Shown: one piece after another, positions 8,077-62,390 of the stretch | Numbering within the stretch: the stretch's first letter is position 1 | Layout of the letters: each line of letters opens with the position of its first letter | Translations under genes and position numbers: made by a program | Notes under the pieces: generated by a model | Told to the model about the DNA's origin: nothing | What the model saw: the letters and a program-made list of their open reading frames with translations, nothing else | The model's database searches: none | NCBI GenBank assembly: GCA_002269645.1 | Contig: NIVC01000282.1 | Coordinates: 124,001-188,000 of the forward strand | Source of the DNA: Macrostomum lignano | Taxonomy: Eukaryota | Length of the DNA: 64,000 nt | Direction: 5' to 3'

Positions 8077-8196
8077 AGTTTAGAGAACAACCCCGTGTAG
8101 TGACCGGGATAAAGAATAGCACTACAGCTTCGCAAGCTTGTCGTAAAAGGCGACTAATCCGAGCGACACAAAGACAGCGACAAATTGACGACAATT

Positions 8197-8865: not shown

Positions 8866-8935
8866 AACATATGCTTGTTACGTATCTTGAATAATCCTCA
8901 ATCGTTCTAACTATACCTATACCTATCGCCCACAG

Positions 8936-11174: not shown

Positions 11175-12172
11175 GGCATCTGCTTCCTTATTTTGGCATC
11201 TGCTTCCTTATTTTGGCATCTGCTTCCTTATTTTGGCATCTGCTTCCTTATTTTGGCATCTGCTTCCTTACTTTGGCATCTGCTTCCTTATTTTGGCATC
11301 TGCTTCCTTACTTTGGCATCTGCTTCCTTACTTTGGCATCTGCTTCCTTATTTTGGCATCTGCTTCCTTATTTTGGCATCTGCTTCCTTATTTTGGCATC
11401 TGCTTCCTTATTTTGGCATCTGCTTCCTTATTTTGGCATCTGCTTCCTTATTTTGGCATCTGCTTCCTTATTTTGGCATCTGCTTCCTTATTTTGGCATC
11501 TGCTTCCTTATTTTGGCATCTGCTTCCTTATTTTGGCATCTGCTTCCTTATTTTGGCATCTGCTTCCTTATTTTGGCATCTGCTTCCTTATTTTGGCATC
11601 TGCTTCCTTATTTTGGCATCTGCTTCCTTATTTTGGCATCTGCTTCCTTATTTTGGCATCTGCTTCCTTATTTTGGCATCTGCTTCCTTATTTTGGCATC
11701 TGCTTCCTTATTTTGGCATCTGCTTCCTTATTTTGGCATCTGCTTCCTTATTTTGGCATCTGCTTCCTTATTTTGGCATCTGCTTCCTTATTTTGGCATC
11801 TGCTTCCTTATTTTGGCATCTGCTTCCTTATTTTGGCATCTGCTTCCTTATTTTGGCATCTGCTTCCTTATTTTGGCATCTGCTTCCTTATTTTGGCATC
11901 TGCTTCCTTATTTTGGCATCTGCTTCCTTATTTTGGCATCTGCTTCCTTATTTTGGCATCTGCTTCCTTATTTTGGCATCTGCTTCCTTATTTTGGCATC
12001 TGCTTCCTTATTTTGGCATCTGCTTCCTTATTTTGGCATCTGCTTCCTTATTTTGGCATCTGCTTCCTTATTTTGGCATCTGCTTCCTTATTTTGGCATC
12101 TGCTTCCTTATTTTGGCATCTGCTTCCTTATTTTGGCATCTGCTTCCTTATTTTGGCATTTGCTTCCTCACT
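11175..12172. repeat. Minisatellite, 20-bp unit GGCATCTGCTTCCTTATTTT, ~50 near-identical copies
   Basis: Direct reading; explains the three overlapping repetitive ORFs. Confidence 0.98.
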
Positions 12173-21800: not shown

Positions 21801-24800
21801 GCAACATTATTGATTTCCATAACAGGTCACAAAAGGGGCAAAGCATTGGCATGTCCACCCATATTACTGGGGGGAGGACACGTCCCCCCCCCTCGATGGC
21901 GACGCCCCTGGTGTGTATGAGTGCGTGCTGTGAACAGTAATGGGGCGCTTGTGTGTACTGTGCCAGGGTACCTGGAATATAATTTTATTAATATAGCTCC
22001 TAGACTTTTCTTTTAGCATCGAGGTCTATTTTAATAGACCTCGATGTGCTATTCTGATGGGACAAAAAGGGCCAAATAAGGTTTAAAAAGCTCTATTGAG
22101 GTTATATGAGGTCAGCTGAAATCTACTACCAAAATTTAGCAACTCTTTAGGGTAGCGCAATAGACTCACGGGTTCCTTCTTGATGTCTTTGTCCAGGTCG
22201 AGCCTGGTCAGACTCTTATTAACGCTAAGCGCCAATTTAAGCGCCATGAGACCGGCAGTTCGAATCTGATTGTCGCGCAGGTCCAGCCTGAGCAGCTGGG
22301 GACTCTCGGCCAGGCATTCGGCCAAGGCTACAGCGCCTTCGCAAGCGATTCGGCACCATTGGAGGCCGAGTCTAAGCAGAGTTCGATTACGTAATAGGCC
22401 TTCGCGCAGCAGGTGGACGCCCTCGCTGCCAATCAGATTGTGCCCGAGGTTCAACGTTTGCAGATGCCGATTGACGGCTAGGGCGGCGGACACCGCCGGC
22501 ATGGCCTCGTGGCTGATCTGGTTGTGCCACAGCACCAGCGCGGCCAGGCCGCACTCGCCGCCCTGCTGTTCGTACAGGCCCTCGCAGATGTACGCGCAGC
22601 CAGTGTCCTGCCCGAGGGGGTTAAATGAAGGTCAAATAAAACGCCCAAATGAAGGTCAAATAAATGTCAGATAGAATCTATAAGGGTCGCTATGACAACA
22701 CGAGTATAGAATAGCGATGCAAGTTAAGCAAAGTTGGCTGCGGTTAGTACTTAGTACAAAGCTGAATGGGGCAGCTCAAATCAAAACTCGGGCTTGAACA
22801 CAGATACTAGAATATAACTAGATGGGCCACGCAGCAAATTTATACGCGCAAGCTACTTTCAGATCAGTAGTAAGTTAAACTGAAGCATTTTAATGTATTT
22901 TTAAAGACAGAGGCGTATTTATTGGCTTTTAACCCCCCCCCCCTGCCCCGCCACCCAATGTTTATTGCCTTCCCGGTTTTTTCCAGCCATGTACATTTCA
23001 GTGGACTGGCCAATGTACATCATGACTGAACCAATTAGCAAGCTGTTTACGCCTGTAAGCTTGGCCTCTAAACTTATCAAAGTCATTCAAGCGCACCTGC
23101 AGAGCATTGTTCCGCACGTCCAGCATCTGCAGAGTTGGCGTGTTTCTCAACAAGCTGGCCAGGTGCTGGCCATCGCTGCTGGTCATCTTGTTGTCGGCCA
23201 ACAGCAGCTCGCGAAGGCTCTCGTTGATGCGTAGGGCCGTTACTGAGGAGGATAGGTTGGCATAGATATTTATTAATATATTCAGAGGTCAACTCAGTAC
23301 ACAAACTTAAGAAAATCTAGGGATCATATAAGGATCATAACGATTAACGAAGGACGATATAAATATAGAAGGCCGAGAAACGTTTGTTTGGTAGAAAACA
23401 TTTGAAGGCTGGTTCTATGCTAAAAATAAACTATTGATTAAAATAAAAAATATTTTCATCGGGGGGCCGTTGTCCAGTGGTCTGGGGCAACGCTCAGATA
23501 TGCCAGCGGCCCAGGCCCGATTCCCAGAGCAGTCACATTAATTTGAGGCTAAATTGGAATCTCGACTTGGCTCTGCTCGTGCAATTAACGACCTTGAAAG
23601 CCAACCCCCAAGGCACAGTGAAGTGTACATGCCTAACGATAAATAAAGTTAGGGCCGCTGTACACTCCTGTGTGGGTCGCCATCATAAACCCGAAATATC
23701 ACAAACCCGAAATATCACAAACCCGAAATACCATAACTTCGAAAACCAAAATAGTGTTTGACATTGCTAGAACTTTCGGAGTTATGATATTTCGGGTTTG
23801 TGATGGAAAGCGCTTTTCAGAGTTGTGATTTTTCGGTTTTGTGATGCCCCCCTCCTGTGTGAGTGTGTGCCTGTGCGAATGACTGCGTACGTATCCGCGC
23901 GCTTGTGTGCCTGCTCAGGGGAGTCGGCGGAATGGGCAGCAATGCCTCTCGCCGGTTGTGTGACAATGTCGCCTGAAGTGCGCTCTAGCCGAACTTCGAA
24001 TCTCTCATTTGGACACACCTGTAGAATGCGATACCATAAAACAAATAAAATAAATGACCCAGCAACCAACCGAGTATGAGTAGATTCCGGCCAGTAATAT
24101 TCGAATGCTCCAAATGCAGCGTAACCAAAGTGGAGCCAATCCGAAGCGACCGAACCAGGGCCGGGATGCTCTGCTCGGACAGCGGGATGCCGTGCAAATC
24201 AATGGTCTGCAGGCACGGAGTTTTCTTCAACATTCTCGAGCACATCTGCCAGCCGCGCAGTCCGATTCTAGTGTTGTGCGCGATGTTGAGCTTGCAGCAG
24301 GACTCGTAGTACTCGATCATGTCGAACAGGGCGATGGCGCTGTCTTCGTCGAGGCCGCTGCTTTCAAAGTCCAGCGTTTTAAACTGAACCCGTTTAAAAA
24401 TCTCTTCCAGGGCTTCGACCTGCCGGCTGTCTAGCCGGAGATTGCGACAGCTCAGCATCTCGTAGCGATCGTTGCAGACGCTCAGGTCGATGCCCTGCAG
24501 CTGCTCAAGCAGGTGCCGGTGCGGCTGAACTCCGTTGGCGTCGCAGGCAGCCTTGTAGGCGCACACCAGCTCCTCCGTAGTGCAATTGTAGCCTGCAATG
24601 CCCAGCATGCTTATATTATGAATAATCAATATTTAGCTGGTGTCTTCATTTACCTGTCCTTCTTAACCCGTGTCTCACTTCCTCTACCCTTCTCAACCAG
24701 TGTCTCACTTCCTCTACCCTTCTCAACGGGTGTTTCACTTCTTTTACCCTTCTCAACCGGTGTCTCACTTCCTCTACCCTTCTCAACCAGTGTCTCACTT

Positions 24801-33047: not shown

Positions 33048-33803
33048 ATGACCACTCGCATAGCAGCTGTTGCCAATGCTGCCTATCAATTATTTTCGTC
33101 CGTCACTGAGCAGGGCGCGTCAAGCGTCAGCAAGGACGGCCTCGCCCGCCTGCTGCAGCTGCTGTCGAATGTCGGCACCAAGGATGTGGACTTTGACACC
33201 CGCCTCGTCACGGACGCCAGTGGCACTCACTCGCCGCCTGTGCTCTATCTGCACATAGTTGAGAATGCCGCACTGTCTATGGGCATATTTGTTCTGCGCC
33301 CCGGCGCCCGGATCCCGCTGCACGATCATCCGGACATGTTCGGCCTGTGCCGCCTCATCCACGGCAGTCTGCGCTGTCGCGCCTATTCGCCAGCCTCCGC
33401 CTCGGCCGCCGCAGCCGCCAAAGCCGCTCTGGCCGCTCGTCTGTTGCCTCGATGGCAGCTGCCCGAGCTGACTGCCGTCACCCTGTCTACTGACGGCGTG
33501 TTCACCTCTGCCTCACAGCCGCTCCTGCTGACCCCGTCTGAGGGCGGCTATCACGAGCTGCAGGCACTGGGCGACGGAGCGGCTTTTATTGACATCCTGG
33601 CGCCGCCGTACGATCACGACTTGGGCCAGCGGGTCTGCCGCTACTACCGGGAAGTGGCCCTGCCTAACAGCGAGGAACAGAATCGGCAGCATCTGTCAGC
33701 TGATGACGAGCAACAGTCTAAGCACGTCTACCTGCTAGAAATTCCCCAACCCAGGGACTTCGTCTGTGGCACCGTTGACTATACGGGTCCTAAAGTCACC
33801 TGA
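33048..33803 (+). CDS. ADO: 2-aminoethanethiol (cysteamine) dioxygenase, PCO/ADO family, single coding exon
   Basis: 251 aa; cupin motif IPLHDHPDMFGLCRLIHG and AAFIDILAPPYD. Confidence 0.9.
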   Translation: MTTRIAAVANAAYQLFSSVTEQGASSVSKDGLARLLQLLSNVGTKDVDFDTRLVTDASGTHSPPVLYLHIVENAALSMGIFVLRPGARIPLHDHPDMFGLCRLIHGSLRCRAYSPASASAAAAAKAALAARLLPRWQLPELTAVTLSTDGVFTSASQPLLLTPSEGGYHELQALGDGAAFIDILAPPYDHDLGQRVCRYYREVALPNSEEQNRQHLSADDEQQSKHVYLLEIPQPRDFVCGTVDYTGPKVT

Positions 33804-35749: not shown

Positions 35750-36800
35750 AAGGAATCCCCATTCTACTGTAAGGGATTCGCCATTCTACCTGTAAGGGAA
35801 TCCCTATTCTACCTGTAAGGGAATCCCCATTCTACCTGTAAGGGAATCCCCATTCTACCTGTAGGGGAATCCCCATTCTACCCTGTAAGGGATTCGCCAT
35901 TCTACCTGTAAGGGAATCCCCATTCTACCTGTAAGGGAATCCCTATTCTACCTGTAAGGGAATCCCCATTCTACCTGTAAGGGAATCCCCATTCTACCTG
36001 TAGGGATTCGCCATTCTACCCTGTAAGGGAATCCCCATTCTACCTGTAAGGGAATCCCCATTCTACCTGTAAGGGAATCCCCATTCTACCTGTAAGGGAA
36101 TCCCTATTCTACCTGTAAGGGAATCCCCATTCTACCTGTAAGGGAATCCCCATTCTACCTGTAGGGATTCGCCATTCTACCCTGTAAGGGAATCCCCATT
36201 CTACCTGTAAGGGAATCCCCATTCTACCTGTAATGGAATCCCCATTCTACCTGTAAGGGAATCCCTATTCTACCTGTAAGGGAATCCCCATTCTACCTGT
36301 AAGGGAATCCCCATTCTACCTGTAGGGATTCGCCATTCTACCCTGTAAGGGAATCCCCATTCTACCTGTAAGGGAATCCCCATTCTACCTGTAAGGGAAT
36401 CCCCATTCTACCTGTAAGGGAATCCCCATTCTACCCTGTAAGGGAATCCCCATTCTACCTGTAAGGGAATCCCCATTCTACCTGTAAGGGAATCCCCATT
36501 CTACCTGTAAGGGAATCCCCATTCTACCCTGTAAGGGATTCGCCATTCTACCTGTAAGGGAATCCTCATTCTACCTGTAAGGGAATCCCTATTCTACCTG
36601 TAAGGGATTCGCCATTCTACCTGTGAGGGAATCCCCATTCTAATTGTAAGGGAATCCTTATTCTACCTGTAAGGGAATCCCCATTCTACCTGTAAGGGAA
36701 TCCCCATTCTATCTATAAAGTGATCGCCATTCTACCTGTAAGGGAATCCCCATTCTACCTGTAAGGGAATCCCCATTTTACCTATAAGGGAATCTCAATT
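35750..36800. repeat. Minisatellite, 23/24-bp unit GGGAATCCCCATTCTACCTGTAA
   Basis: Direct reading, ~45 copies. Confidence 0.96.
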
Positions 36801-37499
36801 CTACCTATAGTGAAAAATCGCATGTACAAAAACGAATAACATCTATCTACGAGTAATTAGTAGTTAGCCACTGTATGGTTGATACAATTTAATATCTCTA
36901 TGTTTTGCTCCCTGTTAGTGTCGCTGTTAGTATTGCTAAAGTTTTGCAGATAATATGGACTTTGAAATGTGAGGAACATGAGGAAAAACGCAAGCAGATG
37001 CCTCGCTAATTATCATCATCGCTCTGAGAGCGTATAGCGTTTCTTGTTTTTTCATCCATAATGCATTCATTTTGACGTTTCAGTTTCGCATTGCTGCCCG
37101 AAAAGCAAGCGGTTGCTAATTATATGCTGATTAAATTGACCGTGCAAGGCCGATCAATAGCCAGCACTAAGCATTGGCGCTGTGAACTTCGAAAAAAATA
37201 TACATATACAAGCTGTTGAAACCCGCGGATTTTGAACCCGGGGAATTCCAATCCCCAGAACTACTTTTGCATGTATTCTGAAATCTAAGACCATACACAA
37301 ACAAATTAATGTTAGTAGGATAGAGGTAGACATAAAATTAAGCACATTCGTGTAAAATTAGAGTTTGAGGCAAACGTTGATATTGTTTGCTGGGGTACTC
37401 CACAGAATGCCAGGCAATATCTGTCTGACTCTAAAACATGTATTGGCAAACTCTGGCCTCTCCCTGACTCTCCTATGTCCCTTGGATCCTTTAAAATTT

Positions 37500-42900: not shown

Positions 42901-45900
42901 CAATTAAAGGCACACTTTCGATGTGAGGGGATCAGTTAGCCCTCGGCTATATCGTCCCATCCCATACCCTGTCCCAGGGTGTACAGCGGCACTGACTTTC
43001 TAATCGTCAGGCATGTACAGTCTGCGATTTGGATCTGCATCCCATGTACAGTCGCTTCTCTACCCTAACCCACGCCGCAGCACCCCTCTTGGCGCTTCGC
43101 CGCCGGTCACGTGACCAACCCCCCGCTGCGCGACGCGTCGGCCAAAGCCGCTTTAGCCGCCCGGCTAGGCGGCCTGAACTGCGGCCAGCCTTTGGCCGTG
43201 TGCGCCAGCGGTCACTGCGCCTACAAATCCGAGCAGCGAGCGCTCGGCCGCGACGATTTCCGCAAAATCCCGCCCGGCATCAACGGCGTGGAGGACCGGC
43301 TGAGTGTCGTCTGGGAGACCTGCGTCGAAACTGGCGCCATCGATCCCTGCCAGTTCGTGGCCGTGACCTCCGCCAACGCCGCCAAGCTGTTCAACATCTA
43401 CCCGCAGAAGGGCCGCATCGCCGTTGGCAGCGATGCTGACGTCATTGTGTGGAATCCCGCCATCTCCCGGTGAGTGCTGCCTGTTGCTGTTCATCTCCCG
43501 TAAGCTTCTTTTCATTTTGTGCAGTTGTCCGCTCTGAGTCTGAACAAACTATCTACCATGCGTCTATCTGTACCCTGCATTTATCTGTACCATGGCTCCA
43601 TCTGTACCCTGCATCCTTCTGTACCCTGCATCCATCTGTACCCTGCATCCATCTGTACCCTGCATTTATCTGTACCAGCTGCATCCATCTGTACCCTGCA
43701 TCCATCTGTACCCTGCATTTATCTGTATTATGGCTACATCTGTACCCTGCATCTATCTGTACCCTGCATCCATCTGTACCCTGCATCCATCTGTACCCTG
43801 CATTTATCTGTACCAGCTGCATCCATCTGTACCCTGCATCCATCTGTACCCTGCATTTATCTGTATTATGGCTACATCTGTACCCTGCATCTATCTGTAC
43901 CCTGCATCCATCTGTACCCTGCATCCATCTGTACCCTGCATTTATCTGTACCAGCTGCATCCATCTGTACCCTGCATCCATCTGTACCCTGCATTTATCT
44001 GTACCCTGCATTTATCTGTACCAGCTGCATCCATCTGTACCCTGCATCCATCTGTACCCTGCATCCATCTGTACCCTGCATCCATCTGTACCCTGCATCT
44101 ATCTGTACCCTGCATCCATCTGTACCCTGCATCCATCTGTACCCTGCATCCATCTGTACCCTGCATCTATCTGTACCCTGCATCTATCTACCCTGCATCT
44201 ATCTGTACCCCTCATCTATCCACTCAAAACACAATTCGTACATTGCATATATATTTGCTTACTATAAAAAATCCAGAGCATGATATGGCATTAAGGGTAA
44301 GTGTTTGCCAATATTTTCTGTCTAATTAATTTCTATAGCGCATTTATACTATCATAATATTAGACTAGCTAAATTAATAGACACAAGATTAGCACTTTTC
44401 AATGCAGGATGAGTGTTGCTGTTGACGTGTGGCTCTACTGCTGAAAAAGCATTCGATCTTTTTATATTTGGTGCAGGTGTCGTCACTCTTGGTGAAGCAG
44501 CTTTTCAAATTCATTTTCTCAATCATATTTTCATTCTTGTTGCTCCTTTTTTGGAACTGCTTTAAAATCAAACTTTAAAGTCATGCTGATACTGATAGCA
44601 AATAGTGAAAAAGCTGGTTTTCAAAAACCGTAAATTACTGTAGAAATTGGAAGTCACCTAAAATTATGAAAGTAATGTTAGAACTTAGATTTTACATAAT
44701 ATTTTAATAATTATATTAACTATTAACTATATAACTTAATTTTTTATAATTAGCCATATAAACTTACTTTGTTATACGAGCGTAATTTGCCATATAAACA
44801 ACTCAAGTTTGCTGTAATTGGTCATATAAGCAACAACACAGTTTGTTATAACTGGCCATATAAATAACTCAGTTTGTTATCATTGGCCATATAAATAACT
44901 CAGTTTGTTATAATTGGCCATATAAATAACTCAGTTTGTTATAATTGGTCGTCATATAAACAACTCAGTTTGTTATAATTGGTCATACAAACAACTCAGT
45001 TTGTTATAATTGGTCATATAAACAACTCAGTTTGTTATAATTGGTCATATAAACACTCAGTTTGTTATAATTGGTCGTCATATAAACAGCTCAGTTTGTT
45101 ATAATTGGTCATATGAACAACTCAGTTTGTTATAATTGGTCATATAAACACTCAGTTTGTTATAATTGGTCATATGGATAACTAAATTTCAAAATTAACA
45201 ATCCGGAAATTACGAGACTGGCGTTATAACAAAGTAATTTATTTATTTAACAAAATATGTACCTCCTTTACCCCAAGGACCATCTCGGCCAAGGCGCACC
45301 ACGAGACCAGCGATTTCAGCGTATTCGACGGTTTCGCCTGCCACGGCGTCCCCGAGTTTGTCATCAGCGGCGGCCGTCTGGCCGTTGACGAGCGGCAGCT
45401 GCGCGTCACCCAGGGCGTCGGCCGTTTCGTCTCGATGCCGCCGTTTGGCATGCACGCCTACGGCCGGGTGGATCGGCGGGAGCGGGCCAAGGCCGCCAGC
45501 CAGCTGCCCGTGACCAGGGCTGCCTATGATGGGCCGGTGGTTGAGCTCAAGTCCGACCAGGTGAGACTGCTGCCAGGGATTGGCTCTGTGTAACACCAGG
45601 GATTGGCTCTGTGTAACACCAGGAATTGGCTGCGTAACACCAGGGATTGGCTCTGTGTAACACCAGGGATTGGCTCTGTGTAACACCAGGAATTGGCTGC
45701 GTAACACCAGGGATTGGCTCTGTGTAACACCAGGGATTGGCTCTGTGTAACACCAGGAATTGGCTGCGTAACACCAGGGATTGGCTCTGTGTAACACCAG
45801 GGATTGGCTCTGTGTAACACCAGGGATTGGCTCTGTGTAACACCAGGGATTGGCTCTGTGTAACACCAGGGATTGGCTCTGTGTAACACCAGGGATTGGC

Positions 45901-47109
45901 TCTGTGTAACACCAGGGATTGGCTCTGTGTAACACCAGGGATTGGCTCTGTGTAACACCAGGGATTGGCTCTGTGTAACACCAGGGATTGGCTCTGTGTA
46001 ACACCAGGGATTGACTGTGTGTAACACCAGGGATTGGCTCTGTGTAACACCAGGGATTGGCTCTGTGTAACACCAGGGATTGGCTCTGTGTAACACCAGG
46101 GATTGGCTCTGTGTAACACCAGGGATTGGCTCTGTGTAACACCAGGGATTGGCTCTGTGTAACACCAGGGATTGGCTCTGTGTAACACCAGGGATTGGCT
46201 CTGTGTAACACCAGGGATTGGCTCTGTGTAACACCAGGGATTGGCTCTGTGTAACACCAGGGATTGGCTCTGTGTAACACCAGGGATTGGCTCTGTGTAA
46301 CAGCAGGAATTGGCTGCGTAACACCAGGGATTGGCTCTGTGTAACACCAGGGATTGGCTGTGTAACACCAGGGATTGGCTCTGTGTAACACCAGGGATTG
46401 GCTCTGTGTAACACCAGGGATTGGCTCTGTGTAACAGCAGGAATTGGCTGCGTAACAGCAGGGATTGGCTCTGTGTAACACCAGGGATTTGCTCTGTGTA
46501 ACACCACGAATTGGCTGCGTAACAGCAGGGATTGGCTCTGTGTAACACCACGAATTGGCTGCGTAACACCAGGGATTGGCTCTGTAACACTTGGGATTGA
46601 CTCTGTAACACCAAGAATTGACTGTGTGTGACACCAGGGATTGACTCTCTATAACACCAGAGATTGACTGTGTGTAGCACCAGGGATTGGCTCTGTGTAA
46701 CACCAGGGATTGACTCTGTGACACGAGGGATTGGCTCTGTGACTCTGAAATGTCTTAATTGATTCTATAGATTTAATCTGTAATAGCTTGACTGGTTCTG
46801 TAGTGTCTAAATTGAATGTCGGGCTGCATTTCAGATCTGTTTATTACAAGCCTGAATTCACCTAGCCAGGTTCAATAACCCACCACCCAACCCCCTCTCG
46901 CCCCGCAGGCCTCCGCCCCAACGCGGCCATCGAACCCCATCGCGCATGACGACTTCCGTCAGCGCCCGCCAACCCGCGGCGGCGGCCGGGACATGCAGGA
47001 GAGCTCCTTCAGCCTGTCCGGCGCTCAATTCGACGATAAGCGACCGTCCAAGTCGGGCATTCGCACCAACCAGCCGCCAGGCGGGGCCAGCTCTGGTAGT
47101 CTCTGGTAG
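39999..47109 (+). CDS. CRMP: Dihydropyrimidinase-related (CRMP/UNC-33-type) protein; exons 39999-40221, 41051-41460, 42190-42456, 43081-43469, 45278-45560, 46909-47109
   Basis: KKVPLHLQSAQNRLLIKGG, GGIDAHTRFQMPF, ALAGGTT, VHAENG, PPGINGVEDR, KGRIAVGSDAD, C-tail SFSLSGAQFDD..PPGG; splice phases consistent (1,0,0,2,0). Confidence 0.92.
40295..41025. repeat. Intron-1 minisatellite, 20/24-bp units based on CTATCCTGACCCATCTCGGG
   Basis: Direct reading. Confidence 0.93.
41473..41735. repeat. Intron-2 minisatellite, 42-bp unit ATAAGCGATAGACATGTGTAAATAATTGATGGACAGGTGTAC
   Basis: About 6 copies starting 12 nt after the donor. Confidence 0.93.
41795..42165. repeat. Intron-2 minisatellite, 23-bp unit CAGACAGGTGCAGGCATACAGAT
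   Basis: Direct reading. Confidence 0.93.
43560..44220. repeat. Intron-4 minisatellite, ~17-bp unit ATCTGTACCCTGCATCC
   Basis: Direct reading. Confidence 0.93.
44830..45180. repeat. Intron-4 minisatellite, ~31-bp unit AAACAACTCAGTTTGTTATAATTGGTCATAT
   Basis: Direct reading, ~11 copies. Confidence 0.9.
45570..46745. repeat. Intron-5 minisatellite, 23-bp unit CCAGGGATTGGCTCTGTGTAACA
   Basis: About 50 copies starting ~10 nt after the donor. Confidence 0.96.
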
Positions 47110-48632: not shown

Positions 48633-49655
48633 CATAGGCGTAGAAATGAGGGGGGCCAGTGAGGCCTTTTTAAAATGGGGGGGGCAGTAATGGTATCTTG
48701 GCGCCTCCACATTTTAAATGTAAAATGTAGATTTCTTGCTTATTTTTGGTTTTTGCTGCTTTGCATGAATGCATTTTGCTGCAGGGTGACAAAACATAGC
48801 GCCTGCAGCTCCAAAATGAGTGCCTGCGGCGCTAAAATGAGTGCCTGCAGCTCCAAAATGAGTGCCTGCGGCGCTAAAATGAGTGCCTGCGGCGCTTTAT
48901 AAAATGAGTGCCTGCGGCGCTTTATAAAATGAGGGCCTGCGGTGCTAAAATGAGTGCCTGCGGTGCTAAAATGAGTGCCTGCGGCGCTAAAATGAGTGCC
49001 TGCGGTGCTAAAATGAGTGCCTGCGGTGCTAAAATGAGTGCCTGCGGCGCTAAAATGAGTGCCTGCGGTGCTAAAATGAGTGCCTGCGGTGCTAAAATGA
49101 GTGCCTGTGGCGCTAAAATGAGTGCCTGTGGCGCTAAAATGAGTGCCTGTGGTGCTAAAATGAGTGCCTGCGGCGCTAAAATGAGTGCCTGCGGCGCTAA
49201 AATGAGTGCCTGCGGCGCTAAAATGAGTGCCTGCGGCGCTTTATAAAATGAGGGCCTGCGGTGCTAAAATGAGTGCCTGCGGCGCTTTATAAAATGAGGG
49301 CCTGCGGTGCTAAAATGAGTGCCTGCGGCGCTTTATAAAATGAGGGCCTGCGGTGCTAAAATGAGTGCCTGCGGCGCTAAAATGAGTGCCTTCGGCGCTT
49401 TATAAAATGAGGGCCTGCGGTGCTAAAATGAGTGCCTGCGGCGCTTTATAAAATGAGTGCCTGCGGTGCTAAAATGAGTGCCTGCGGCGCTTTATAAAAT
49501 GAGTGCTGACAAGATGGATTCTGAAAATAATCGGTACATGATAATGTGCATTTTCCAAATCTAACTCGACGGGGGCGTGCCCCCTGTGCGCCCCCCCCCC
49601 AAATCCGTCACTGAACCTGCCCCCCCCCCACTTTTTGAAGCGTTCCTACGCCTTA
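48633..49655. mobile_element. Non-autonomous TIR element (CATAGGCGTAG...CCTACGCCTTA) carrying an internal 21-bp satellite array; flanked by the direct repeat TACAACAGAT
   Basis: Direct repeat at 48623-48632 and 49656-49665 (TSD 8-10 bp depending on the TIR end); G-run/C-run subterminal arms. Confidence 0.8.
48800..49510. repeat. Array, 21-bp unit GGCGCTAAAATGAGTGCCTGC
   Basis: Direct reading. Confidence 0.95.
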
Positions 49656-50837
49656 TACAACAGATGTTGCTATAGTTGTCAAGCAATCTTGTCACTAGCT
49701 TACATGTACATGTAAACTAGCTTAAAAATATTCTTGAGGCAACATAGTGGCACAGGTAGTGTTCTCAGTGTTATCTGAGAATGAGCAATAGTGAGCACTG
49801 ACGGGTTTCTGTGCACACTTTTAAAGTAAAAAATCGACCCTAATTGAACATTGCCCACTGGCTATGGACTCGAGTGCATATGCCAAATCTTATTGTACAT
49901 ACGATACGAATTATGACTGCTCACTTTCTTCGTCTCATCAGAAATGTTATATATTACCTCGTATATTCGTTGTCATTGTTTAATTTGACGGCTCGACTCA
50001 CTGATTTTATGAATCTATTTTATCATTGTGACACCTTTCAGTTGCACAGTAATAAGCTAAGAATGATAAAATACTGATAGATTAATGAAACCAATGAGTC
50101 GACCTGTGTTAATTTTATGATTTATGATTATTATAGATATTATTATTATAGATATTATTATAGATATTATTATAGATAGATTAATATATAATCCTACTTT
50201 TCCAAACGAAAAGCTCTATGAACATCAATAGAACTATAAGAAATGCAAAAATGATCAAAAGATGAACAATGAAAAGACAAATTTGAATGCAAGAGTAGGT
50301 TATCATGCCACGGATTGTGCTTCTTGAAGGGCGAGTGCTCCCTTTTTCTTTTTCCTCTCTTTGACAACACCTCTGTCTCAAGCATCCGAGTAAAGAAATT
50401 CAACTCTGTAGCTACTCAGAAATTCAATGTAAATTTTTGTTGCTTCTGTAGCATAAAAGAACGAAACTGTTGTAGTATTGTACATGTATTTTATTGTATG
50501 GTTGTTGGATCCAGTATAAGAATAATAACAGTTTTAAAATTACCAACGTTTTTTACCCGTGACATTTCACTTTTATTTTCCAGCTGACAAAATTTTGGAA
50601 TTTTTTGCTTAAAATTTTTTATGTCGGATTTTTATTAATCCTAAACGCAGTTTATTACAGAAAGCACACTGCACGCGGAAATCAAATTTCTGGCAAAAGA
50701 TATAACTAGAGAGTAATGTATTGGAATAGACGGTTGGACACATTTAAACAAAATAATTGTTTGCTGCCAGCTATGTTTTCTGCGTCTCTCTTTTAATATG
50801 TTCTTTATGTTTGGTCACATGATAATGGGCCAGACGC

Positions 50838-52924
50838 ATGAAGCACTCGGAAGTGGAGGCCTTCATCAGGTCCAGGTAAGCTCAGTCTGTATTAGCTCTG
50901 CGTTTGATTTAAAAATGGGAGTCGCTCGTTACCGCAGTAAAATGTTAACTGCATCATTTCTTTCGCTTCACAGAATCAAGGAGCTATGCTCTGGCAGTCG
51001 AGAGTGTTCTCAAAGTCGTATCGGTCAATCAATAAAAGTTGATCAGCTTGGCGACACTGACAACCAGGTTGGGATCGCGCCACTTGAAGAGAGCGAAATG
51101 TGCGCGACAGAGCAACGCAAAGGCAACGCCGATCAAAATATTGATAAAATCGTTCGCGAAAGAGTTTTCAAGTCAACTAAAAAAGAGGTCAAATACTCTT
51201 CGATGCATGATAAATTCACTCGACTAATCACTCAACTCGTCAAGGAGCTCGCTACGCTGATAAAGAAAATGTTGAAAATAACAATTATTGACATTGGAAC
51301 TGGCGGCTCTAAGGACAGCAGAAACAATCAGCTGAACGAAGGCCACAAGATGTCCTCACTCGTGCTAATGGAGACTCGTAGCAGTGGTCAAAGCGGCAGC
51401 ACTGCAAGCAATGTCGAGCAGCTTTATTCGGAAACGGACCAACTTTTTGAACACATCGGAACAGCGTTCGGTGACGGAGAGGTAGTTTCTGATCGGAAAA
51501 TAGAAGACGGTAAAGAGCACAGGCATGGAAAAGGCAATGATGGCGGTCTAAATAGCATTGAGCACAGCGTTACTGGGAAGTCAATTTTATCCCTGCTTTT
51601 TGCCTACACATTAAGCGGAATTCAACTTAAGCACAGTACAAGCCCTGCGAAACGATTTCTACTCATGCTTTTAGCTGAAGTAAACAAAGTCAACTGCGGC
51701 AGTTCATTAAAGAAGAGCATGCTTAGCGGCGCCTCTGATAAGCAGGGTGGAACACATGGCGATAAGGATGACGGAATCGATGAAGGAGATGGCGAAGGAT
51801 TCAGTGGTGGAGGTGGCGGTGCAGGAGGCGGTGTAGGAGACGGTGGAGGCGGTGGAGGAGGCGGTGGAGGAGACGGTGGAGGAGACGGTGGAGGCGGTGG
51901 AGGAGGCGGTGGAGGAGACGGTGGAGGAGACGGTGGAGGAGACGGTGGAGGCGGTGGAGCAGACGGTGGAGGCGGTGGAGGAGGCGGTGGAGGCGATGGA
52001 GGAGACGGTGGAGGAGGCGGTGGAGGCGGTGGAGGAGGCGGTGGAGGAGACGGTGGAGACGGTGGAGGAGGCGGTGGAGGCGGTGGAGGAGGCGGTGGAG
52101 GAGGCGGTGGAGGAGGCGGTGGAGACGGTGGAGAAGGCGGTGGAGGAGGCGGTGGAGGAGACGGTGGAGGAGACGGTGGAGGAGACGGTGGAGGAGGCGG
52201 TGGAGGAGGCGGTGGAGGAGGCGGTGGCGGTGGAGGAGGGGGTGGAGGAGGTCAAATAATTGCTGGTGGGTGCCGCAATCGGCAGACGGACTTAAAAACA
52301 GTCTTAGAAAGCTACGGATTTCAAACTAAAGCGGCATATATCATTTCCGTTAGTTCTCTAGTGGATTCGACAGGGCAAATATACAGGATGCAGGCCACTG
52401 ATGAAATTACGGCATCAATCGGAAAAATTATCCGAAGGCTACGCCTTGACTTGAAGGATCATCTCAAGCCGAGCACTGCTGCAGATCTGGACCAACCCTC
52501 CTTAGCACGATTTATGAGCCCACAGTCTGGCCTTGTTGCTCAGTTTCTTGTGGACTTTTGCTCAATTAGGGTTGACTACATGATGGCTCTCCTTCATCCC
52601 AGGGCAGATGTAAATCTATTCATAGTGCAGGGCAGCCTTGACCACAGAGACGCGAATGGCCGAGTGTTTAGTTTACCAGAACGAATTCACAACAGTCACG
52701 AGAATTGCCTGTACATCTGCAGCCACTCGGTCACCGAGGACATGCAGGGCAGCGACTTTTTCAGCTGTTTTAGCGAGCATGTAGAGAAGAATTCGTGGAA
52801 TCAGGTGAGCGAGGAGTTTACGCTCACAATGGCGCACGTGCGTGGCATAACGCAGCTTCAAACAAACAGAATTCGAAATCCGTTCTTTGACAATTACCTT
52901 TGCAAGCAGTTGTACCTGCAATGA
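50838..52924 (+). CDS. Paralogue A: ankyrin-less Gly-linker + degenerate caspase-like protein (exons 50838-50875, 50974-52924); may be a truncated duplicate or pseudogene
   Basis: 50826-50890 is nearly identical to 55515-55580, including the GTAAG donor; phase-2 intron 50876-50973; the C-terminal ~200 aa align with paralogue B. The ATG at 50838 is inferred. Confidence 0.6.
51800..52255 (+). repeat. Coding poly-Gly/Asp repeat (GGA/GGC/GGT/GAC codons)
   Basis: About 150 codons, in frame within paralogue A. Confidence 0.9.
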
Positions 52925-54961: not shown

Positions 54962-57796
54962 ATGACGCGCGACATCAGCGGCAAGACCCCCTTCCTGGTG
55001 AAAGTTAAGGAAAAGGATCTCACAGCGGTGGAGCAGTACCTGAGGAATCGGCCTGAGAATTGTGCATCTCTGAAAGACAAGGACTACTGCAGAAGGAACG
55101 CGCTGATCCTTGCTGCAATAAACAAAGATGTCAAAATGATAAAGCTGCTGCTCCAGCACAGGCAGCAGGGTCTGGATGTCGACTGTCAGGTTAGAGTCTT
55201 TAAAATATCTTGGCAGACCAGGTGTTGCTCTAAATTGACTCCCAATTAGCCATAGTTTTTCCTAACCGGCTCCCTTCCAGGACATTCAGGGCCTCACCGC
55301 CCTCGCGCACGCAGCGGAGAGGAACGCTGCTGACGTGGTCAGCGCCCTCCTGGATGCTAGAGCCGACCACCAACTGGCGGACTGCTGCGACAACACGCCG
55401 ATCATTTTGTGTGCCAAGGAGGGCCACCTCGATTCCATCAGAGCGCTGGCTCCGTTTGTTAAGGATGCCGAAGACTGGCAGGTGAAAGGCGATTTCGGTC
55501 TGACAGCCGAGGAGTGGGCCAGACGCATGAAGCACTCGGAAGTGGAGGCCTTCATCAGGGCTAGGTAAGCTCAGTCTGTTTTAGGCTGATAAAGTAAAAA
55601 CTGCAGCATCTTTATTTTTTATTGCTTTGCAGAATTGATGTGATGAGTAGCTCTCGAATTTCTATGGACGAATCGGAAGCAGATGGCAATGGTGACACTA
55701 CTGATCCGACTCAGCCTGAGTCTGTATGTACTTTAAAGAGCGATGGAGATACACGTGCATCAAAAAATGCTGACGATCCACGCAAGGGTGACGCTAAGAC
55801 GGAAAAGTACTACAGTGACGGTGACGGTAAAGAATTTAATAAAAATAGCTCAGAGTTCGGTTCTCCGGTTGGAGTTGGCAACGATAAAAATCTGAGCGCA
55901 GTTGAGCAGTTTCTGCGACTCGGTGGTAAACTAAATGAAATTGCTGAAATCATTACGTTGAACCGGCCTGCTGTACATCAAGAAAACATTTTTAATGACA
56001 ACGTTTTTGATCTTGTGATAGCATTTGTTTTCAAAAAGTTTTTACTGTGCAGAAAATCGTTAGACAGGGACGTCGAACCTACTTGCTTACAAAATAAAAA
56101 AAGTTGCACTAAGAAAATCAGTGCAGATGAAAGAGGAGACGAAAAAGACAGTGACGGCAACGGGGGCGGAAGCGGGGGCGGAAGCGGTGGCGGAAATGGT
56201 GGCGGAAATGGTGGCGGAAATGGTGGCGGAAATGGTGGCGGAAATGGTGGCGGAAATGGTGGCGGAAATGGTGGCGGAAATGGTGGCGGAAATGGTGGCG
56301 GAAATGGTGGCGGAAATGGTGGCGGAAATGGTGGCGGAAATGGTGGCGGAAATGGTGGCGGAAATGGTGGCGGAAATGGTGGCGGAAATGGTGGCGGAAA
56401 TGGTGGCGGAAATGGTGGCGGAAATGGTGGCGGAAATGGTGGCGGAAATGGTGGCGGAAATGGTGGCGGAAACAGTGGCGGAAATGGTGGCGGAAGCGGT
56501 GGCGGAAACAGTGGCGGAAATGGTGGCGGAAATAGTGCCGGAAATGGTGGCGGAAACAGTGGCGGAAATGGTGGCGGAAACAGTGGCGGAAATGGTGGCG
56601 GAAACAGTGGCGGAAATGGTGGCGGAAATGGTGCCGGAAATGGTGCCGGAAACAGTGGCGGAAATGGTGGCGGAAATGGTGGCGGAAATGGTAGCGGAAA
56701 TGGTGGCGGAAACAGTGGCGGAAACAGTGGCGGAAACAGTGGCGGAAACAGTGGCGGAAACAGTGGCGGAAATGGTGGCGGAAACAGTGGCGGAAATGGT
56801 GGCGGAAATAGTGGCGGAAATGGTGGCGGAAATGGTGGCGGAAATGGTGGCGGAAACAGTGGCGGAAATGGTGGCGGAAACAGTGGCGGAAGCGGTGGGG
56901 GAAATGGTGGGGGAAACAGTGGCGGAAATGGTGGCGGAAATGGTGGCGAAAACAGTGGCGGAAATGGTGGCGGAAGCGGTGGCGGAAATGGTGGCGTAAA
57001 TGGTGGCGGAAATAGTGGCGAAAACAGTGGCGGAAATGGTGGCGGAAATGGTGGAGGAAGCGGTGACGGAAACGGTGGCGAAAACAGTGGCGGAAGCAGA
57101 GCAGAAAGAAGTACAAGAAGTCATGATGCTGCAGAACCTGGCAACCAAGCAGATGATATGAGTACATTTATGTTGGAAGAGAACTATGATATCGAAAACA
57201 AAGCTGCTTACATCATAATGTGCAGCCACATAAAAGAGCCCTCTGGAATAAACGTTTCGATTCAGGCGGTGGAACAAATCGTTGGGAATGAAATTCCCAT
57301 TATTATTCGGAGGCTCGGCCTAGCTCTAGCTGACTTCCTTCAACTCAGAGTTGCCGCCGACCTCACGGAGAACCACATTGATCGATTTGTTGGCTTGCAG
57401 GAGGGCCTGGTTGCACAATTCCTGGTGGATTTTTGCTCCATAGGCTCTGAGAAAAGAGACATCCTGCTCCGTCCCAGGGCAGACGTGAACCTTTTCATTG
57501 TTCAAGGCTATGCAGAGGTTGTAGACGGTGCCATTGTCACTTCCTGGCCAGTACGGACATCCGACAGTCACCCGAACAGCCTGTACGCGTGGAGTCACTC
57601 CGCTGGCGAGGACTTGCACTGCAGCCAATTCTTCGACTGCTTCAAAGAGCGCGTGCAGCAGAACGGATTGCTGCAGCGTCACGAAGAGTTCAGGCTTACA
57701 ATGAGGCACGTTTGCCATGAAACACAGCGTCAGACAAGTAACAAGCAAAATCCGCGCGTGAATATGTATCTACAGAAAAATTTGTACTTGCAGTGA
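54962..57796 (+). CDS. Paralogue B: ankyrin repeats + (GGGN)n linker + degenerate caspase-like domain (exons 54962-55189, 55281-55564, 55633-57796)
   Basis: Ankyrin motifs [57 protein letters not shown]; GT-AG introns in phases 0 and 2; the start codon is tentative. Confidence 0.8.
56155..57100 (+). repeat. Coding 12-bp repeat GGTGGCGGAAAT = (GGGN)n
   Basis: About 75 units in frame within paralogue B. Confidence 0.95.
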
Positions 57797-59826: not shown

Positions 59827-60699
59827 GCGCAGTGTGAGAAGCAGGAACGAGCCATCAAAGAGACGTAGATTAACCGAGGTGCAGCATAGAGCTCATTAAA
59901 AATGAGCAAAAATCCAGTAAGCCTATTGAAGCGTCAAGCTCATCTGCATGTACAAGCAGGCATCTGCATGCTCCATACTGCAGCTGCAGACGGACCTAAG
60001 TTAGAAAAGCAAAGCCAATTACATGCTTAGATCGTTGTATCGGGGTCGGAGAGGGGGCGAGGAGGTTCGTGCGCCTCAAAGGACCCGCGAATCAAAGGAT
60101 AGAAAAGTTGTCACGGCACCGGGGCACCATGCGTGCTGCAGGCAGCCACCGGGATTGAGTTGCCTCGTCTAGCGAAGCTCTGGAGCCGGAGCTGCACTGA
60201 ATGACGGCTTGATTAGAAATGCGTTCGGCCACGCAGGACAGCAAGCCGAGGAGACAGAGATGGAGCTGGATAAGGGAAGGCTATGAAGGAGATAGAGTAA
60301 GGGATAGAAGGCGCCCGAAACAGGAAATGAGGAAGCTGTGCGGTCAGAGGGGTTAATGATGTCGGCATGGCTAAGGCAGAGGATTTAGTTTTGCCTCTGT
60401 CCGGGACATGGAATAGAGACACTTATCTTCACTATGAAGATGACGCTCTGGCGCTGGGATGGGATTTTGAGGATGGGCTGGGCCTCCCATGGGGATTTGA
60501 GCACCTCTTGAACTACTCATTCGCTTTGAGCTGATGGAGTAACGACTGGCTACTCGATTCGACTCGAAGATTCCTTAGACGAATAATCTCCAAGTGGGAT
60601 TTTCTACTGTGGAGAAGTTGAAAGATTGCCTAATTTGGTTCCGGTGCTGCGATTTAGCGAAGCATCGATGCTACTTTTCGATTTAATATATTCTTTTCT

Positions 60700-61300
60700 A
60701 ATCTGATCCAATCTAATCTAATCTAATCTAATCTAGTTTAATTTAAACTAATCTAATCTCATCTAATCTAATCTAATCTAATCTCATCTAATCTAATCTC
60801 ATCTAATCTAATCTAATCTCATCTAATCTAATCTAATCTAAACTAAACTAATCTAATCTTTTCTAATCTAATCAAGTCTAATCTAATCTAATCTAATCGA
60901 GTCTAATCTAATCTAATCTATTCTAATCTAATTTAAAGTGATCTAATCTCATCTAATCTAATCTAAACTAATCTAATCTAATCTAACCTAATCTAATCTA
61001 ATCAAGTCTAATCTAATCTAATCAAGTTTAATCTAATTAAGTCTAATCTAATCTAATCTAATCTAATCTAATTTAATTTAATCTAGTCGAATCTAATTTA
61101 ATCTAATCTAATCTAATCTAATCTAATCTAATCTAATCTAATCTAATCTAATAAAGTCTAATCTAATCTAATCAAGTCTAATCTAATCTAATTTAATCTA
61201 ATCTAATCTAGTCTCATCTAATCAAGTCTAATATAATCTAATTTAATTTAATCTAATCTAATCTAATCTAATCTAATCTAATATATTCTATTCTATTCTA
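60700..61300. repeat. (TCTAA)n pentamer microsatellite
   Basis: Direct reading. Confidence 0.95.
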
Positions 61301-61852
61301 TTCTTATCTGATCTATTCTTTTCTATTCGGATTAGATCTAATCTGAACTAATCTAATCGAATGATGATAAGAAAACTGTCTATTTAGTAGCACAGTTCTA
61401 AGTATAAAATGAAGGATGGAAGACCGCAGTCTCAAAAAGCACAGTGCCAATAGAAATCCATCCATTCTTCACCGGCCCATTCTGCACTTCTTCGGCGCAG
61501 GAAATGATTAACGACTTTAGATTGGCTCGCTACTGCACTGTTGCACCGGTCACACTATGGATGCGGTAGGCTGGCCTCCACACCGCTCTTGTGAAAACAG
61601 CAGCAGAGAAAGAGCTCCAAGCGGTCTCAGAGACCCTTCTGTTTGCAGGTCTGGGGTTGGGAAAACTGATTAAAATTCATTGATCCATCTGGCCCCTCCT
61701 CCCTCTCCATCTCTTTCTCTCTCTTCTCTCCATCTTTCAATTACTCTCAGTGTTTTTATCCTGTCACACTTTTTGTCTGTTGGTTTCTTCCTTGGCTCTC
61801 GAATCGGATTCTTGGCGAAGAAAACTTTCACTACATATCGGCGAGAATGGCT

Positions 61853-62390
61853 ATAGCTTCTGCAAGAGGTACCATAGCTTCTGCAAGAGGTACCATAGCT
61901 TCTGCAATGGGTACCATAGCTTCTGCAAGAGGTACCATAGCTTCTGCAAGAGGTACCATAGCTTCTGCAAGAGGTACCATAGCTTCTGCAAGAGGTACCA
62001 TAGCTTCTGCAAGAGGTACCATAGCTTCTGCAATGGGTACCATAGCTTCTGCAATGGGTACCATAGCTTCTGCAATGGGTACCATAGCTTCTGCAATGGG
62101 TACCATAGCTTCTGCAAGAGGTACCATAGCTTCTGCAATGGGTACCATAGCTTCTGCAAGAGGTACCATAGCTTCTGCAAGAGGTACCATAGCTTCTGCA
62201 AGAGGTAACATAGCTTCTGCAAGAGGTACCATAGCTTCTGCAATAGGTATCATAGCTTCTGCAAGAGGTACCGTAGCTTCTGCAAGAGGTACCGTAGCTT
62301 CTGCAAGAGGTACCATAGCTTCTGCAAGAGGTACCATAGCTTCTGCAAGAGGTACCATAGCTTCTGCAAGGGGCGCCAGAGCTTCTGCAA
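61853..62390. repeat. Minisatellite, 21-bp unit AGCTTCTGCAAGAGGTACCAT
   Basis: Direct reading, ~25 copies. Confidence 0.95.

What the first reader, a model, noticed from the sequence alone, without database searches (positions are those of the whole stretch)
54962..57796. Ankyrin - glycine linker - catalytically dead caspase-like protein
Seen: the last ~205 aa of both paralogues follow caspase motifs in order: A.II (first beta strand), [12 protein letters not shown] (vs FVCVLLSHG), LFIVQGY/QGS (vs KPKLFIIQAC), LYAWSHSAG (vs FLYAYSTAPG), SQFF (vs GSWFI) and KQNP..LQKNLYL (vs KQIP..LTKELYF). The catalytic His is Ile (57440; 52565) and the Cys is Tyr/Ser (57509; 52634), and the His-Cys spacer is shortened. 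Established: dead caspase folds such as c-FLIP act as regulators, normally with death-fold prodomains. Inference: an ankyrin-sensor pseudocaspase, an architecture I do not recognise, possibly an innate-immune or cell-death decoy.
Basis: partly seen in the sequence, partly recalled or inferred. Interest (0 to 1): 0.7.

Follow-up and report, generated by a model that had tools for sequence, protein, structure and literature searches.

The report
Flatworm ankyrin protein, possible dead caspase
A gene of the flatworm Macrostomum lignano joins ankyrin repeats, through a very long glycine-rich tether, to a conserved 205-residue tail that may be a burnt-out caspase; the caspase link is only weakly supported, and ankyrin-caspases are already known in flatworms, including an intact one in this species.

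Summary
The window is Macrostomum lignano contig NIVC01000282.1. The three-exon gene at 54962-57796 is real. Its splice junctions match UniProt fragment A0A1I8GBE0. It encodes about four ankyrin repeats (Pfam E 4.5e-16), a 177-aa acidic segment, a 310-aa (GGGN)n tether made by a 12-bp minisatellite, and a ~205-aa C-terminal domain. A 5'-truncated paralogue without ankyrin exons lies at 50826-52924. The two C-terminal domains are 48% identical, with saturated synonymous sites (codon-position identity 65/65/36%), so the domain is under purifying selection. It has no homologue in two billion-scale protein searches, no Pfam or PDB hit, and an unusable AlphaFold model (pLDDT 30). Directed tests give only a weak caspase signal. 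A 14-sequence caspase HMM scores copy B 10.3 bits over the p10-like end (0 of 20,000 shuffles), and hhalign gives P 0.009 and probability 5%. Copy A shows nothing, and library-wide this is chance level. Ankyrin-prodomain caspases are already described in flatworms, and M. lignano PAA88208 is an intact one. Verdict: real orphan-domain gene; a pseudocaspase is plausible (~0.45) but unproven.

The parts
54962..55189 (+). Gene B exon 1: start codon and ankyrin repeats 1-2 (to ...DVDCQ)
   Evidence: This is the first ATG of the ORF after an in-frame stop. A GT donor follows at 55190. Pfam Ank/Ank_2 hits. The junction is identical in P0121.
55281..55564 (+). Gene B exon 2: ankyrin repeats 3-4 and a capping helix (DIQGLTAL...EAFIRA)
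   Evidence: The AG acceptor ends at 55280 and a GTAAGC donor starts at 55565, with a phase-2 split of an Arg codon. Pfam Ank_5/Ank_4 hits. Junction confirmed by P0121.
55633..56164 (+). Gene B exon 3, first part: 177-aa acidic, low-complexity middle region
   Evidence: Translation. No Pfam hit. Not alignable with the middle region of copy A apart from a weak GxGND..L..E patch.
56165..57095 (+). Coding 12-bp minisatellite (GGCGGAAATGGT x 77.6), giving a (GGGN)n tether of about 310 aa
   Evidence: TRF: 90% matches, 0% indels. The flanking coding parts are in the same frame.
57143..57796 (+). Gene B C-terminal conserved domain (about 205-217 aa) plus the stop codon; the proposed dead caspase-like domain
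   Evidence: 48% identical to copy A. Codon-position identity is 65/65/36%; pN is 0.34 and pS is 0.81. Residues 142-216 match caspase HMMs at 9.2-10.3 bits.
50826..50875 (+). Copy A: remnant of the last 17 codons of ankyrin exon 2, with an intact GT donor at 50876
   Evidence: 95.7% nucleotide identity to 55515-55584 over 70 bp. tblastn: 94% over 17 aa.
50974..51805 (+). Copy A exon 3, first part: diverged middle region. The acceptor AG ends at 50973, in the same phase as in B.
   Evidence: Sequence read-out.
51806..52252 (+). Copy A glycine/aspartate-rich minisatellite (GGTGGAGGAGGC x 37)
   Evidence: TRF.
52277..52924 (+). Copy A C-terminal conserved domain plus the stop codon
   Evidence: Alignment A1; dN/dS.

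Best explanation
Shown: gene B is a real, selected, apparently Macrostomum-restricted gene. Its 891-aa product has three parts. The first is an N-terminal module of about four ankyrin repeats, a protein-binding domain. The second is a long, probably disordered spacer of about 490 aa: an acidic segment followed by a (GGGN)n tether that grows and shrinks by minisatellite slippage. The third is a C-terminal globular domain of about 205 aa kept by purifying selection. Copy A is a partial duplicate that kept the tether and the domain but lost the ankyrin exons. Inferred: the C-terminal domain is most likely a strongly degenerated caspase (p20/p10) domain. It would descend from the ankyrin-prodomain caspases of flatworms and would have lost the catalytic Cys (Tyr or Ser in 'QG[Y/S]'), the His-Gly and the P1-binding arginines. 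On this reading the protein cannot cleave. It would act like other pseudocaspases: the dead domain pairs with or caps an active caspase or its platform, and the ankyrin module, held on a long leash, binds the partner that recruits it. It would therefore tune caspase activation rather than execute it.
For: Gene reality and selection. The splice junctions equal those of UniProt A0A1I8GBE0. Ank_2 scores E 4.5e-16. The C-terminal domains are 48% identical, with third codon positions at 36% identity against 65% at positions 1 and 2, and pS 0.81 against pN 0.34. Both copies keep a glycine repeat at the same place and in frame. Caspase reading. A 5-sequence caspase HMM scores B at 9.2 bits over HMM positions 170-239, which align to B residues 142-216 and end together at the C-terminus. 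Four of 20,000 shuffles reach that score, the best of 111 window ORF decoys scores 1.9 bits, and the result is stable to leave-one-out. A 14-sequence HMM that includes M. lignano and Echinococcus caspases scores 10.3 bits, with 0 of 20,000 shuffles reaching it and decoys at 4.5 bits or less. hhalign of the A+B profile against the same alignment scores 24.2, against 14.3+-2.6 for shuffles (1 of 150 reach it), P 0.0087. The excess similarity sits at positions conserved between A and B (3 of 500 shuffles). The order of strands and helices in the low-confidence model mostly fits a caspase. Precedent: ANK caspases form a flatworm clade (PMC11463336). M. lignano PAA88208 has Ank, a low-complexity linker and Peptidase_C14, the same three-part layout.
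Against: No open search supports a caspase. Pfam is silent, whole or in fragments. PDB sequence searches are silent. hhalign and hmmsearch against a caspase-3-only profile score the same as shuffles. The HH-suite probability is only 5-7%. Copy A gives no local signal in any test. Residues that differ between A and B show no consistent fit to caspase columns. A flatworm-only caspase HMM scores lower (5.1 bits) than the one built mostly from human caspases, which is not expected for a recent derivative. B's ankyrin region is no closer to PAA88208 (27% identity, E 0.002 pairwise) than to generic ankyrin proteins. The nominal P of about 2e-5 becomes E of about 0.5 across 24,736 Pfam families, and an unrelated family (Spectrin_SYNE1) scores 15 bits on the same fragment. 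In the global-alignment test, the unrelated ADO protein reaches z 3.1-4.2. The p20 half aligns unstably, and the His-to-Cys segment would be about 19 residues short, which would remove helix alpha-3. The AlphaFold model is unusable (pLDDT 30). No expression or interaction data were available.
Confidence: 0.45

Rival explanations
1. The C-terminal domain is a lineage-specific orphan domain with no caspase ancestry, and the motif resemblance is chance. The protein would still be an ankyrin adaptor that holds an unknown effector or oligomerisation domain on a long flexible glycine tether.
For: There is no homologue among 5.8 billion clustered proteins or 1.84 billion representatives, and none in metagenome contigs. 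Pfam and PDB are silent. The HH-suite probability is 5-7%. Copy A shows no caspase signal. Unrelated families and decoys reach comparable scores.
Against: Copy B's p10-like match was reached by 0 of 20,000 shuffles and was about 6 bits above all window decoys. It is co-terminal and collinear with the caspase domain. The one family it resembles is the one known to sit behind ankyrin repeats in flatworms, and in this species.
Confidence: 0.4
2. The locus is not one functional protein. The glycine minisatellite would be intronic or a recent expansion that has disabled the gene, so the ankyrin exons and the C-terminal domain are not expressed together. Copy A would be a pseudogene.
For: The only database model (P0121) stops exactly where the repeat begins. 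No annotated protein in the assembly contains the C-terminal domain. The window carries about 20 minisatellites, and a period-12 array stays open in every frame. Copy A has lost its ankyrin exons.
Against: Both copies keep about 650-bp ORFs despite saturated synonymous divergence, with a clear codon-position pattern. Both keep a glycine-coding repeat at the same position and in frame with both flanks. Copy A keeps an intact donor, acceptor and phase. P0121 probably ends at a contig break in the older assembly.
Confidence: 0.1
3. The domain is an active hydrolase of another kind that uses residues conserved in both copies (Cys in FLVDFCSI, His in SHS), not a dead enzyme.
For: Cys98 and His152 (numbering of alignment A1) are invariant between the two copies.
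Against: With only two sequences at 48% identity, half of all residues are invariant, so this carries no weight. There is no similarity to any hydrolase family.
Confidence: 0.03

Closest known systems
Macrostomum lignano PAA88208 (ankyrin-prodomain caspase; sequence in the supplement of bioRxiv 10.1101/2023.12.11.571055)
   Same: Same species and the same three-part layout: N-terminal ankyrin repeats, a long low-complexity linker, and a C-terminal domain of about 210-250 aa that ends the protein.
   Different: PAA88208 has a clear Peptidase_C14 domain (E 9e-55) with SHG and QACRG, and its linker is Q-rich. Gene B has no detectable Peptidase_C14, lacks the dyad, and its linker is a glycine minisatellite. 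The ankyrin parts are only 27% identical and the C-terminal parts are not alignable pairwise.
ANK caspases of parasitic flatworms (Schistosoma, Echinococcus, Taenia; Lee et al. 2014; Krasovec et al. 2024, PMC11463336)
   Same: An ankyrin prodomain in front of a caspase-type C-terminal domain, in Platyhelminthes.
   Different: Those are recognisable, presumably active caspases and are reported as parasite-specific. This gene comes from a free-living macrostomid, is catalytically dead if it is a caspase at all, and clade membership could not be tested.
c-FLIP (CFLAR) long form, a vertebrate pseudocaspase (my own knowledge; its complex with caspase-8 is PDB 3H11, whose caspase-8 chain appears)
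   Same: A caspase-like domain with the catalytic Cys replaced (by Tyr in c-FLIP, Tyr in copy B) and the His lost, placed behind a protein-interaction prodomain. It regulates by heterodimerising.
   Different: c-FLIP is easily recognised as Peptidase_C14, has tandem DED prodomains, and has no repeat tether. No interaction data exist here.
C. elegans CSP-2/CSP-3 caspase-like inhibitors (my own knowledge)
   Same: Non-catalytic caspase relatives that restrain an active caspase by binding it. Here too, the best-supported similarity is limited to the small-subunit (p10) part.
   Different: They are short proteins with no ankyrin domain and no linker, and their homology to caspases is clear.

Membership tests
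Caspases (Peptidase_C14, clan CD) | Significant profile similarity to the family model | tested here: not met
   There is no PF00656 hit at E<=10 for the whole domains or for fragments. hhalign probability is 0.2-7%. The directed HMM gives 9.2-10.3 bits for copy B only, which is about E 0.5 library-wide.
Caspases (Peptidase_C14, clan CD) | Catalytic His (SHG) and Cys (QACxG) dyad | tested here: not met
   The Cys position is Tyr in B and Ser in A in every alignment. There is no His-Gly dipeptide anywhere in either domain. Only the Gln of QAC is kept.
Caspases (Peptidase_C14, clan CD) | P1-aspartate pocket (Arg after beta-1, Arg of SWR) | tested here: not met
   The aligned positions are Pro/Ser-Thr and are absent from the shortened loop. 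The alignment of this part is uncertain.
Caspases (Peptidase_C14, clan CD) | Caspase-hemoglobinase alpha/beta fold | tested here: inconclusive
   AlphaFold2 on the two-sequence alignment gives pLDDT 30.3 and pTM 0.19. Foldseek against PDB gives no match with E<=0.001. The secondary-structure order is broadly compatible but of low confidence.
Flatworm ANK caspases | N-terminal ankyrin-repeat prodomain | tested here: met
   Ank_2 E 4.5e-16; Ank, Ank_4 and Ank_5 E about 1e-9, for copy B only.
Flatworm ANK caspases | Recognisable caspase domain at the C-terminus and placement inside the ANK-caspase clade | tested here: not met
   A flatworm caspase HMM that includes PAA88208 and E. granulosus CDS23854 scores B at 5.1 bits (4 of 1000 shuffles reach it) and A at -0.1. 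Pairwise BLASTP finds nothing. No phylogeny is possible at this similarity.
Pseudocaspases (c-FLIP-like regulators) | Binds and modulates an active caspase | not testable with these tools
   This needs co-immunoprecipitation or pull-down with M. lignano caspases.
Ankyrin-repeat proteins | Tandem 33-residue ankyrin repeats above the Pfam gathering score | tested here: met
   Ank_2 scores 59.6 bits against a cut-off of 27.3. Five ankyrin models pass their cut-offs.

The most novel reading that the evidence does not exclude
A catalytically dead descendant of the flatworm ankyrin-caspases survives under selection in a free-living, early-branching flatworm. It would work as a c-FLIP-like brake or platform for caspase activation in a phylum that lost FADD. 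The reach of its ankyrin 'hook' would be set by a coding minisatellite whose length can change quickly, giving a rapidly tunable tether in a cell-death regulator.
Probability: 0.3. Interest if true: 0.6.

Novelty: new variant of a known kind. Interest (0 to 1): 0.4.

Why it matters
If the tail is a dead caspase, flatworm ANK caspases would not be an innovation of parasites, and an invertebrate pseudocaspase regulator would have arisen independently of c-FLIP. That would be testable in M. lignano, which is amenable to RNAi and transgenesis. That qualifies the published statement that free-living flatworms lack them. If the tail is not a caspase, the finding is a fast-evolving orphan domain on an ankyrin adaptor. 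That would be of local interest only, and a warning that collinear motif matching by eye can reach a nominal P of about 1e-5 without homology.

Tried and rejected
- **Homologue searches.** The word-indexed search of 5.8 billion proteins with the B domain found nothing. The exhaustive HMMER search of 1.84 billion representatives with the A+B profile found nothing. A metagenome contig scan found nothing.
- **Structure.** AlphaFold2 on the two-sequence alignment gave pLDDT 30, and Foldseek on that model gave only noise. I did not run AlphaFold on an alignment padded with caspases.
- **Homeologous copies.** Fetching the copies on NIVC01003016.1 and NIVC01000356.1 failed. No annotated protein lies within 10 kb of the locus.
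- **Caspase-3-only profile.** hhalign and hmmsearch against it scored the same as shuffles.
- **End-to-end global profile alignment.** It gave z 3.7-5.7 against shuffles. I reject it as evidence because the unrelated ADO protein reaches z 3.1-4.2 in the same test.
- **Transfer test.** Do copy A's differing residues fit caspase columns when copy B drives the alignment? The results were mixed, P 0.01-0.5.
- **Free-end-gap alignment at standard penalties.** It collapses to trivial overlaps.
- **Bacterial or viral origin, or a transposon protein.** Rejected: there are no hits anywhere, and the genes lie in host context between ADO/DPYS-like genes and repeats.
Full report
**Origin of the window.** The intronless ORF at 33048-33803 (PCO_ADO) is found exactly on three contigs of assembly GCA_002269645.1. 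One of them, NIVC01000282.1, is 100% identical to the window over 20.7 kb, so window base 1 is contig base 124001. The other two contigs are 88-98% identical homeologous copies. The only database protein matching the gene under study is named by UniRef as Macrostomum lignano. This is therefore an animal (flatworm) genome. The window also carries about 20 minisatellite arrays, a Ty3-like retroelement, and ordinary host genes.

**Gene model.** The finding spans three reading-frame segments. Reading the DNA gives exon 1 at 54962-55189, a 91-bp GT..AG intron, exon 2 at 55281-55564, a 68-bp GTAAGC..CAG intron that splits an Arg codon, and exon 3 at 55633-57796. The spliced CDS is 2676 nt, encoding 891 aa. 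Both junctions (..DVDCQ|DIQGL.. and ..FIRA-R-IDVMSS..) are identical in UniRef100_A0A1I8GBE0 (P0121). That is a 288-aa partial model which stops exactly where the glycine repeat begins. Residues 1-170 hit five Pfam ankyrin models above their cut-offs (Ank_2 E 4.5e-16). Residues 171-347 are acidic and of low complexity, with no family hit.

**The glycine tether.** Residues of about 348-657 are (GGGN)n, encoded by a 12-bp minisatellite (GGCGGAAATGGT x 77.6, 90% matches, no indels). Because the period is a multiple of three, the array is open in all frames, so its openness is not evidence of coding. However, the coding parts on both sides are in the same frame. The paralogue also has a glycine-coding array, with a different unit (GGTGGAGGAGGC x 37), at the same position and also in frame. 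This argues that a glycine tether is an old, translated feature.

**The paralogue.** Copy A (50826-52924) shares with B only two things. One is the last 17 codons of ankyrin exon 2 plus the start of the intron: 70 bp at 95.7% identity, oddly higher than anything else between the two copies. The other is the C-terminal domain. Homology begins abruptly at 50826. Donor, acceptor (AG ending at 50973) and phase are intact. No ankyrin-like reading frame exists in the 4 kb upstream, and the middle regions are not alignable. 'Ankyrin - linker - domain' therefore holds for B only.

**The C-terminal domain is real.** The last 217 and 214 residues are 48% identical. Identity by codon position is 65%, 65% and 36%. 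pN is 0.34, and pS is 0.81, which is saturated. Two ORFs of about 650 bp that stay open and keep their protein sequence after synonymous saturation are under purifying selection.

**Open searches for relatives all failed.** No Pfam family hits either domain at E<=10, whole or as fragments. The fragment scan returned only chance hits: Spectrin_SYNE1 at 15 bits, NCBP3, IcmF_helical. No PDB chain scores better than E 0.3. No protein was found in the 5.8-billion word-indexed collection or the 1.84-billion exhaustive HMMER search with the A+B profile. No metagenome contig was found. The collection does contain eukaryotic proteomes, including M. lignano entries. The domain is therefore an unannotated, lineage-restricted orphan at the sequence level. 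AlphaFold2 with the two-sequence alignment gave pLDDT 30.3, and Foldseek on that model gave noise.

**Directed tests of the caspase claim.**
- Against a profile of 14 vertebrate caspase-3 sequences, hhalign aligned only the last 17 residues (E 0.39). Its score (14.0) equals that of column shuffles (14.6+-2.8). hmmsearch with filters off put both copies within the top 10-12% of shuffles.
- I then built broader profiles. With this 5-sequence HMM, copy B scores 9.2 bits over HMM 170-239, aligned to B 142-216 (the p10-like part), ending together with the model. Four of 20,000 shuffles reach that score, the best of 111 window ORF decoys scores 1.9 bits, and leave-one-out gives 6.9-9.6 bits.
- The second profile added nine flatworm caspases taken from the supplement of bioRxiv 10.1101/2023.12.11.571055. 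With this 14-sequence HMM, B scores 10.3 bits (HMMER P 1.9e-5). No shuffle of 20,000 reaches it, and decoys score 4.5 bits or less.
- hhalign of the A+B profile against the same alignment scores 24.2 (P 0.0087, probability 4.6%; shuffles 14.3+-2.6, 1 of 150 reach it). B alone gives probability 7%.
They disagree on the p20 half, including the proposed His position.
- The excess similarity is concentrated at residues conserved between A and B.

**What counts against the caspase claim.**
- Copy A alone is null in every local test.
- A flatworm-only HMM scores lower than the one built mostly from human caspases (5.1 bits).
- A's differing residues do not consistently fit caspase columns.
- The global-alignment z-scores (up to 5.7) are not specific, because the unrelated ADO protein reaches 4.2.
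- A P of about 2e-5 for one family becomes E of about 0.5 over 24,736 families, and an unrelated family did score higher on the same fragment.

Sequence statistics alone therefore do not establish homology.

**Independent context.** Krasovec et al. (PMC11463336) describe 'ANK caspases', which have an ankyrin prodomain plus a caspase. They form a monophyletic clade of parasitic flatworms, first noted in Schistosoma (Lee et al. 2014), and are said to be absent from free-living triclads. Their Table S1 lists none for M. lignano. Yet their own sequence file contains M. lignano PAA88208. By Pfam this protein has Ank (50-163), a Q-rich linker and Peptidase_C14 (352-597, E 9e-55), with SHG and QACRG intact. 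So the layout of ankyrin, low-complexity linker and C-terminal domain exists in this species with a working caspase. It means the one family the orphan domain faintly resembles is the family expected behind ankyrin repeats in a flatworm. However, B's ankyrin region is only 27% identical to PAA88208's (E 0.002 pairwise), and the C-terminal parts do not align pairwise. Any common origin would therefore be old.

**Synthesis.** Shown: a real, spliced, selected gene with ankyrin repeats, a disordered acidic segment, a minisatellite-encoded glycine tether and a conserved orphan C-terminal domain, plus a truncated paralogue. Inferred, at about 0.45: the domain is a degenerate, non-catalytic caspase domain. 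All automatic alignments place Tyr/Ser at the Cys position. No His-Gly exists in either copy, and the P1 arginines are gone. Such a protein would act by binding, as c-FLIP or CSP-3 do (my own knowledge), with the ankyrin module as the recruiting end. About equally likely, at 0.4, the resemblance is chance and the domain is a new Macrostomum-specific fold. A smaller possibility, at 0.1, is that the parts are not expressed as one protein. An immune or decoy function is speculation in every case.

**Novelty and interest.** The architecture is not new, because ANK caspases are published and an intact one is present in this species. A dead version with an expanded tether in a free-living flatworm would be a new variant of that kind. 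Interest is moderate. The finding becomes testable with Macrostomum transcriptomes, a confident structure prediction, cDNA and RNAi. As it stands, the central claim is unproven.

Noticed in passing
not in the window: M. lignano protein PAA88208 (supplement of bioRxiv 10.1101/2023.12.11.571055): PAA88208 has Ank (50-163) plus Peptidase_C14 (352-597, E 9e-55) with SHG and QACRG. It is an intact ankyrin-prodomain caspase in a free-living flatworm, although the paper's Table S1 lists ANK-caspase as absent from M. lignano and the text calls the clade parasite-specific.
   Followed up: partly
window 50826-50895 and 55515-55584: A 70-bp patch, covering the end of ankyrin exon 2 and the first 20 bases of the intron, is 95.7% identical between the two copies. 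The selected C-terminal domains are only about 68-73% identical at the DNA level. This could be gene conversion or a constrained splicing element; it is unexplained.
   Followed up: partly
window 375-8076: A Ty3/gypsy-type retroelement. One ORF carries a zinc knuckle. A 1640-aa ORF carries protease, RT, RNase H and integrase, and its first 260 residues weakly resemble a viral fusion glycoprotein (PF24664, E 2.9e-5, below the cut-off).
   Followed up: no
window 8185-9568: Two adjacent Cys-rich ORFs (226 and 210 aa) have sub-threshold RING-finger hits (zf-RING_2, Sina_RING). They lie directly downstream of the retroelement.
   Followed up: no
whole window, e.g. 11175-12168, 21043-21779, 35752-36806, 45573-46741, 48801-49491, 61853-62390: There are about 20 minisatellite arrays with periods of 12-138 bp, plus a (TCTAA)133 array at 60697-61362. 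The 21-bp unit at 21043-21779 recurs in reverse orientation at 48801-49491. Several arrays lie inside introns of the amidohydrolase gene.
   Followed up: no
window 33048-33803, 39897 to about 47000, and 22083-24629 (minus strand): Neighbouring host genes: an intronless cysteamine-dioxygenase-like gene (PCO_ADO), a multi-exon amidohydrolase/dihydropyrimidinase-like gene, and a leucine-rich-repeat gene. The ADO region is present on three contigs at 88-98% identity, consistent with homeologous copies in this assembly.
   Followed up: partly
window 55990-56120 and 51480-51700 (middle regions of B and A): The only similarity between the otherwise unalignable middle regions is a weak patch: GxGND..L..hE followed by hydrophobic helix-like segments (BLASTP E 0.1-0.7). 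It may be a small conserved helical element in front of the glycine tether.
   Followed up: no
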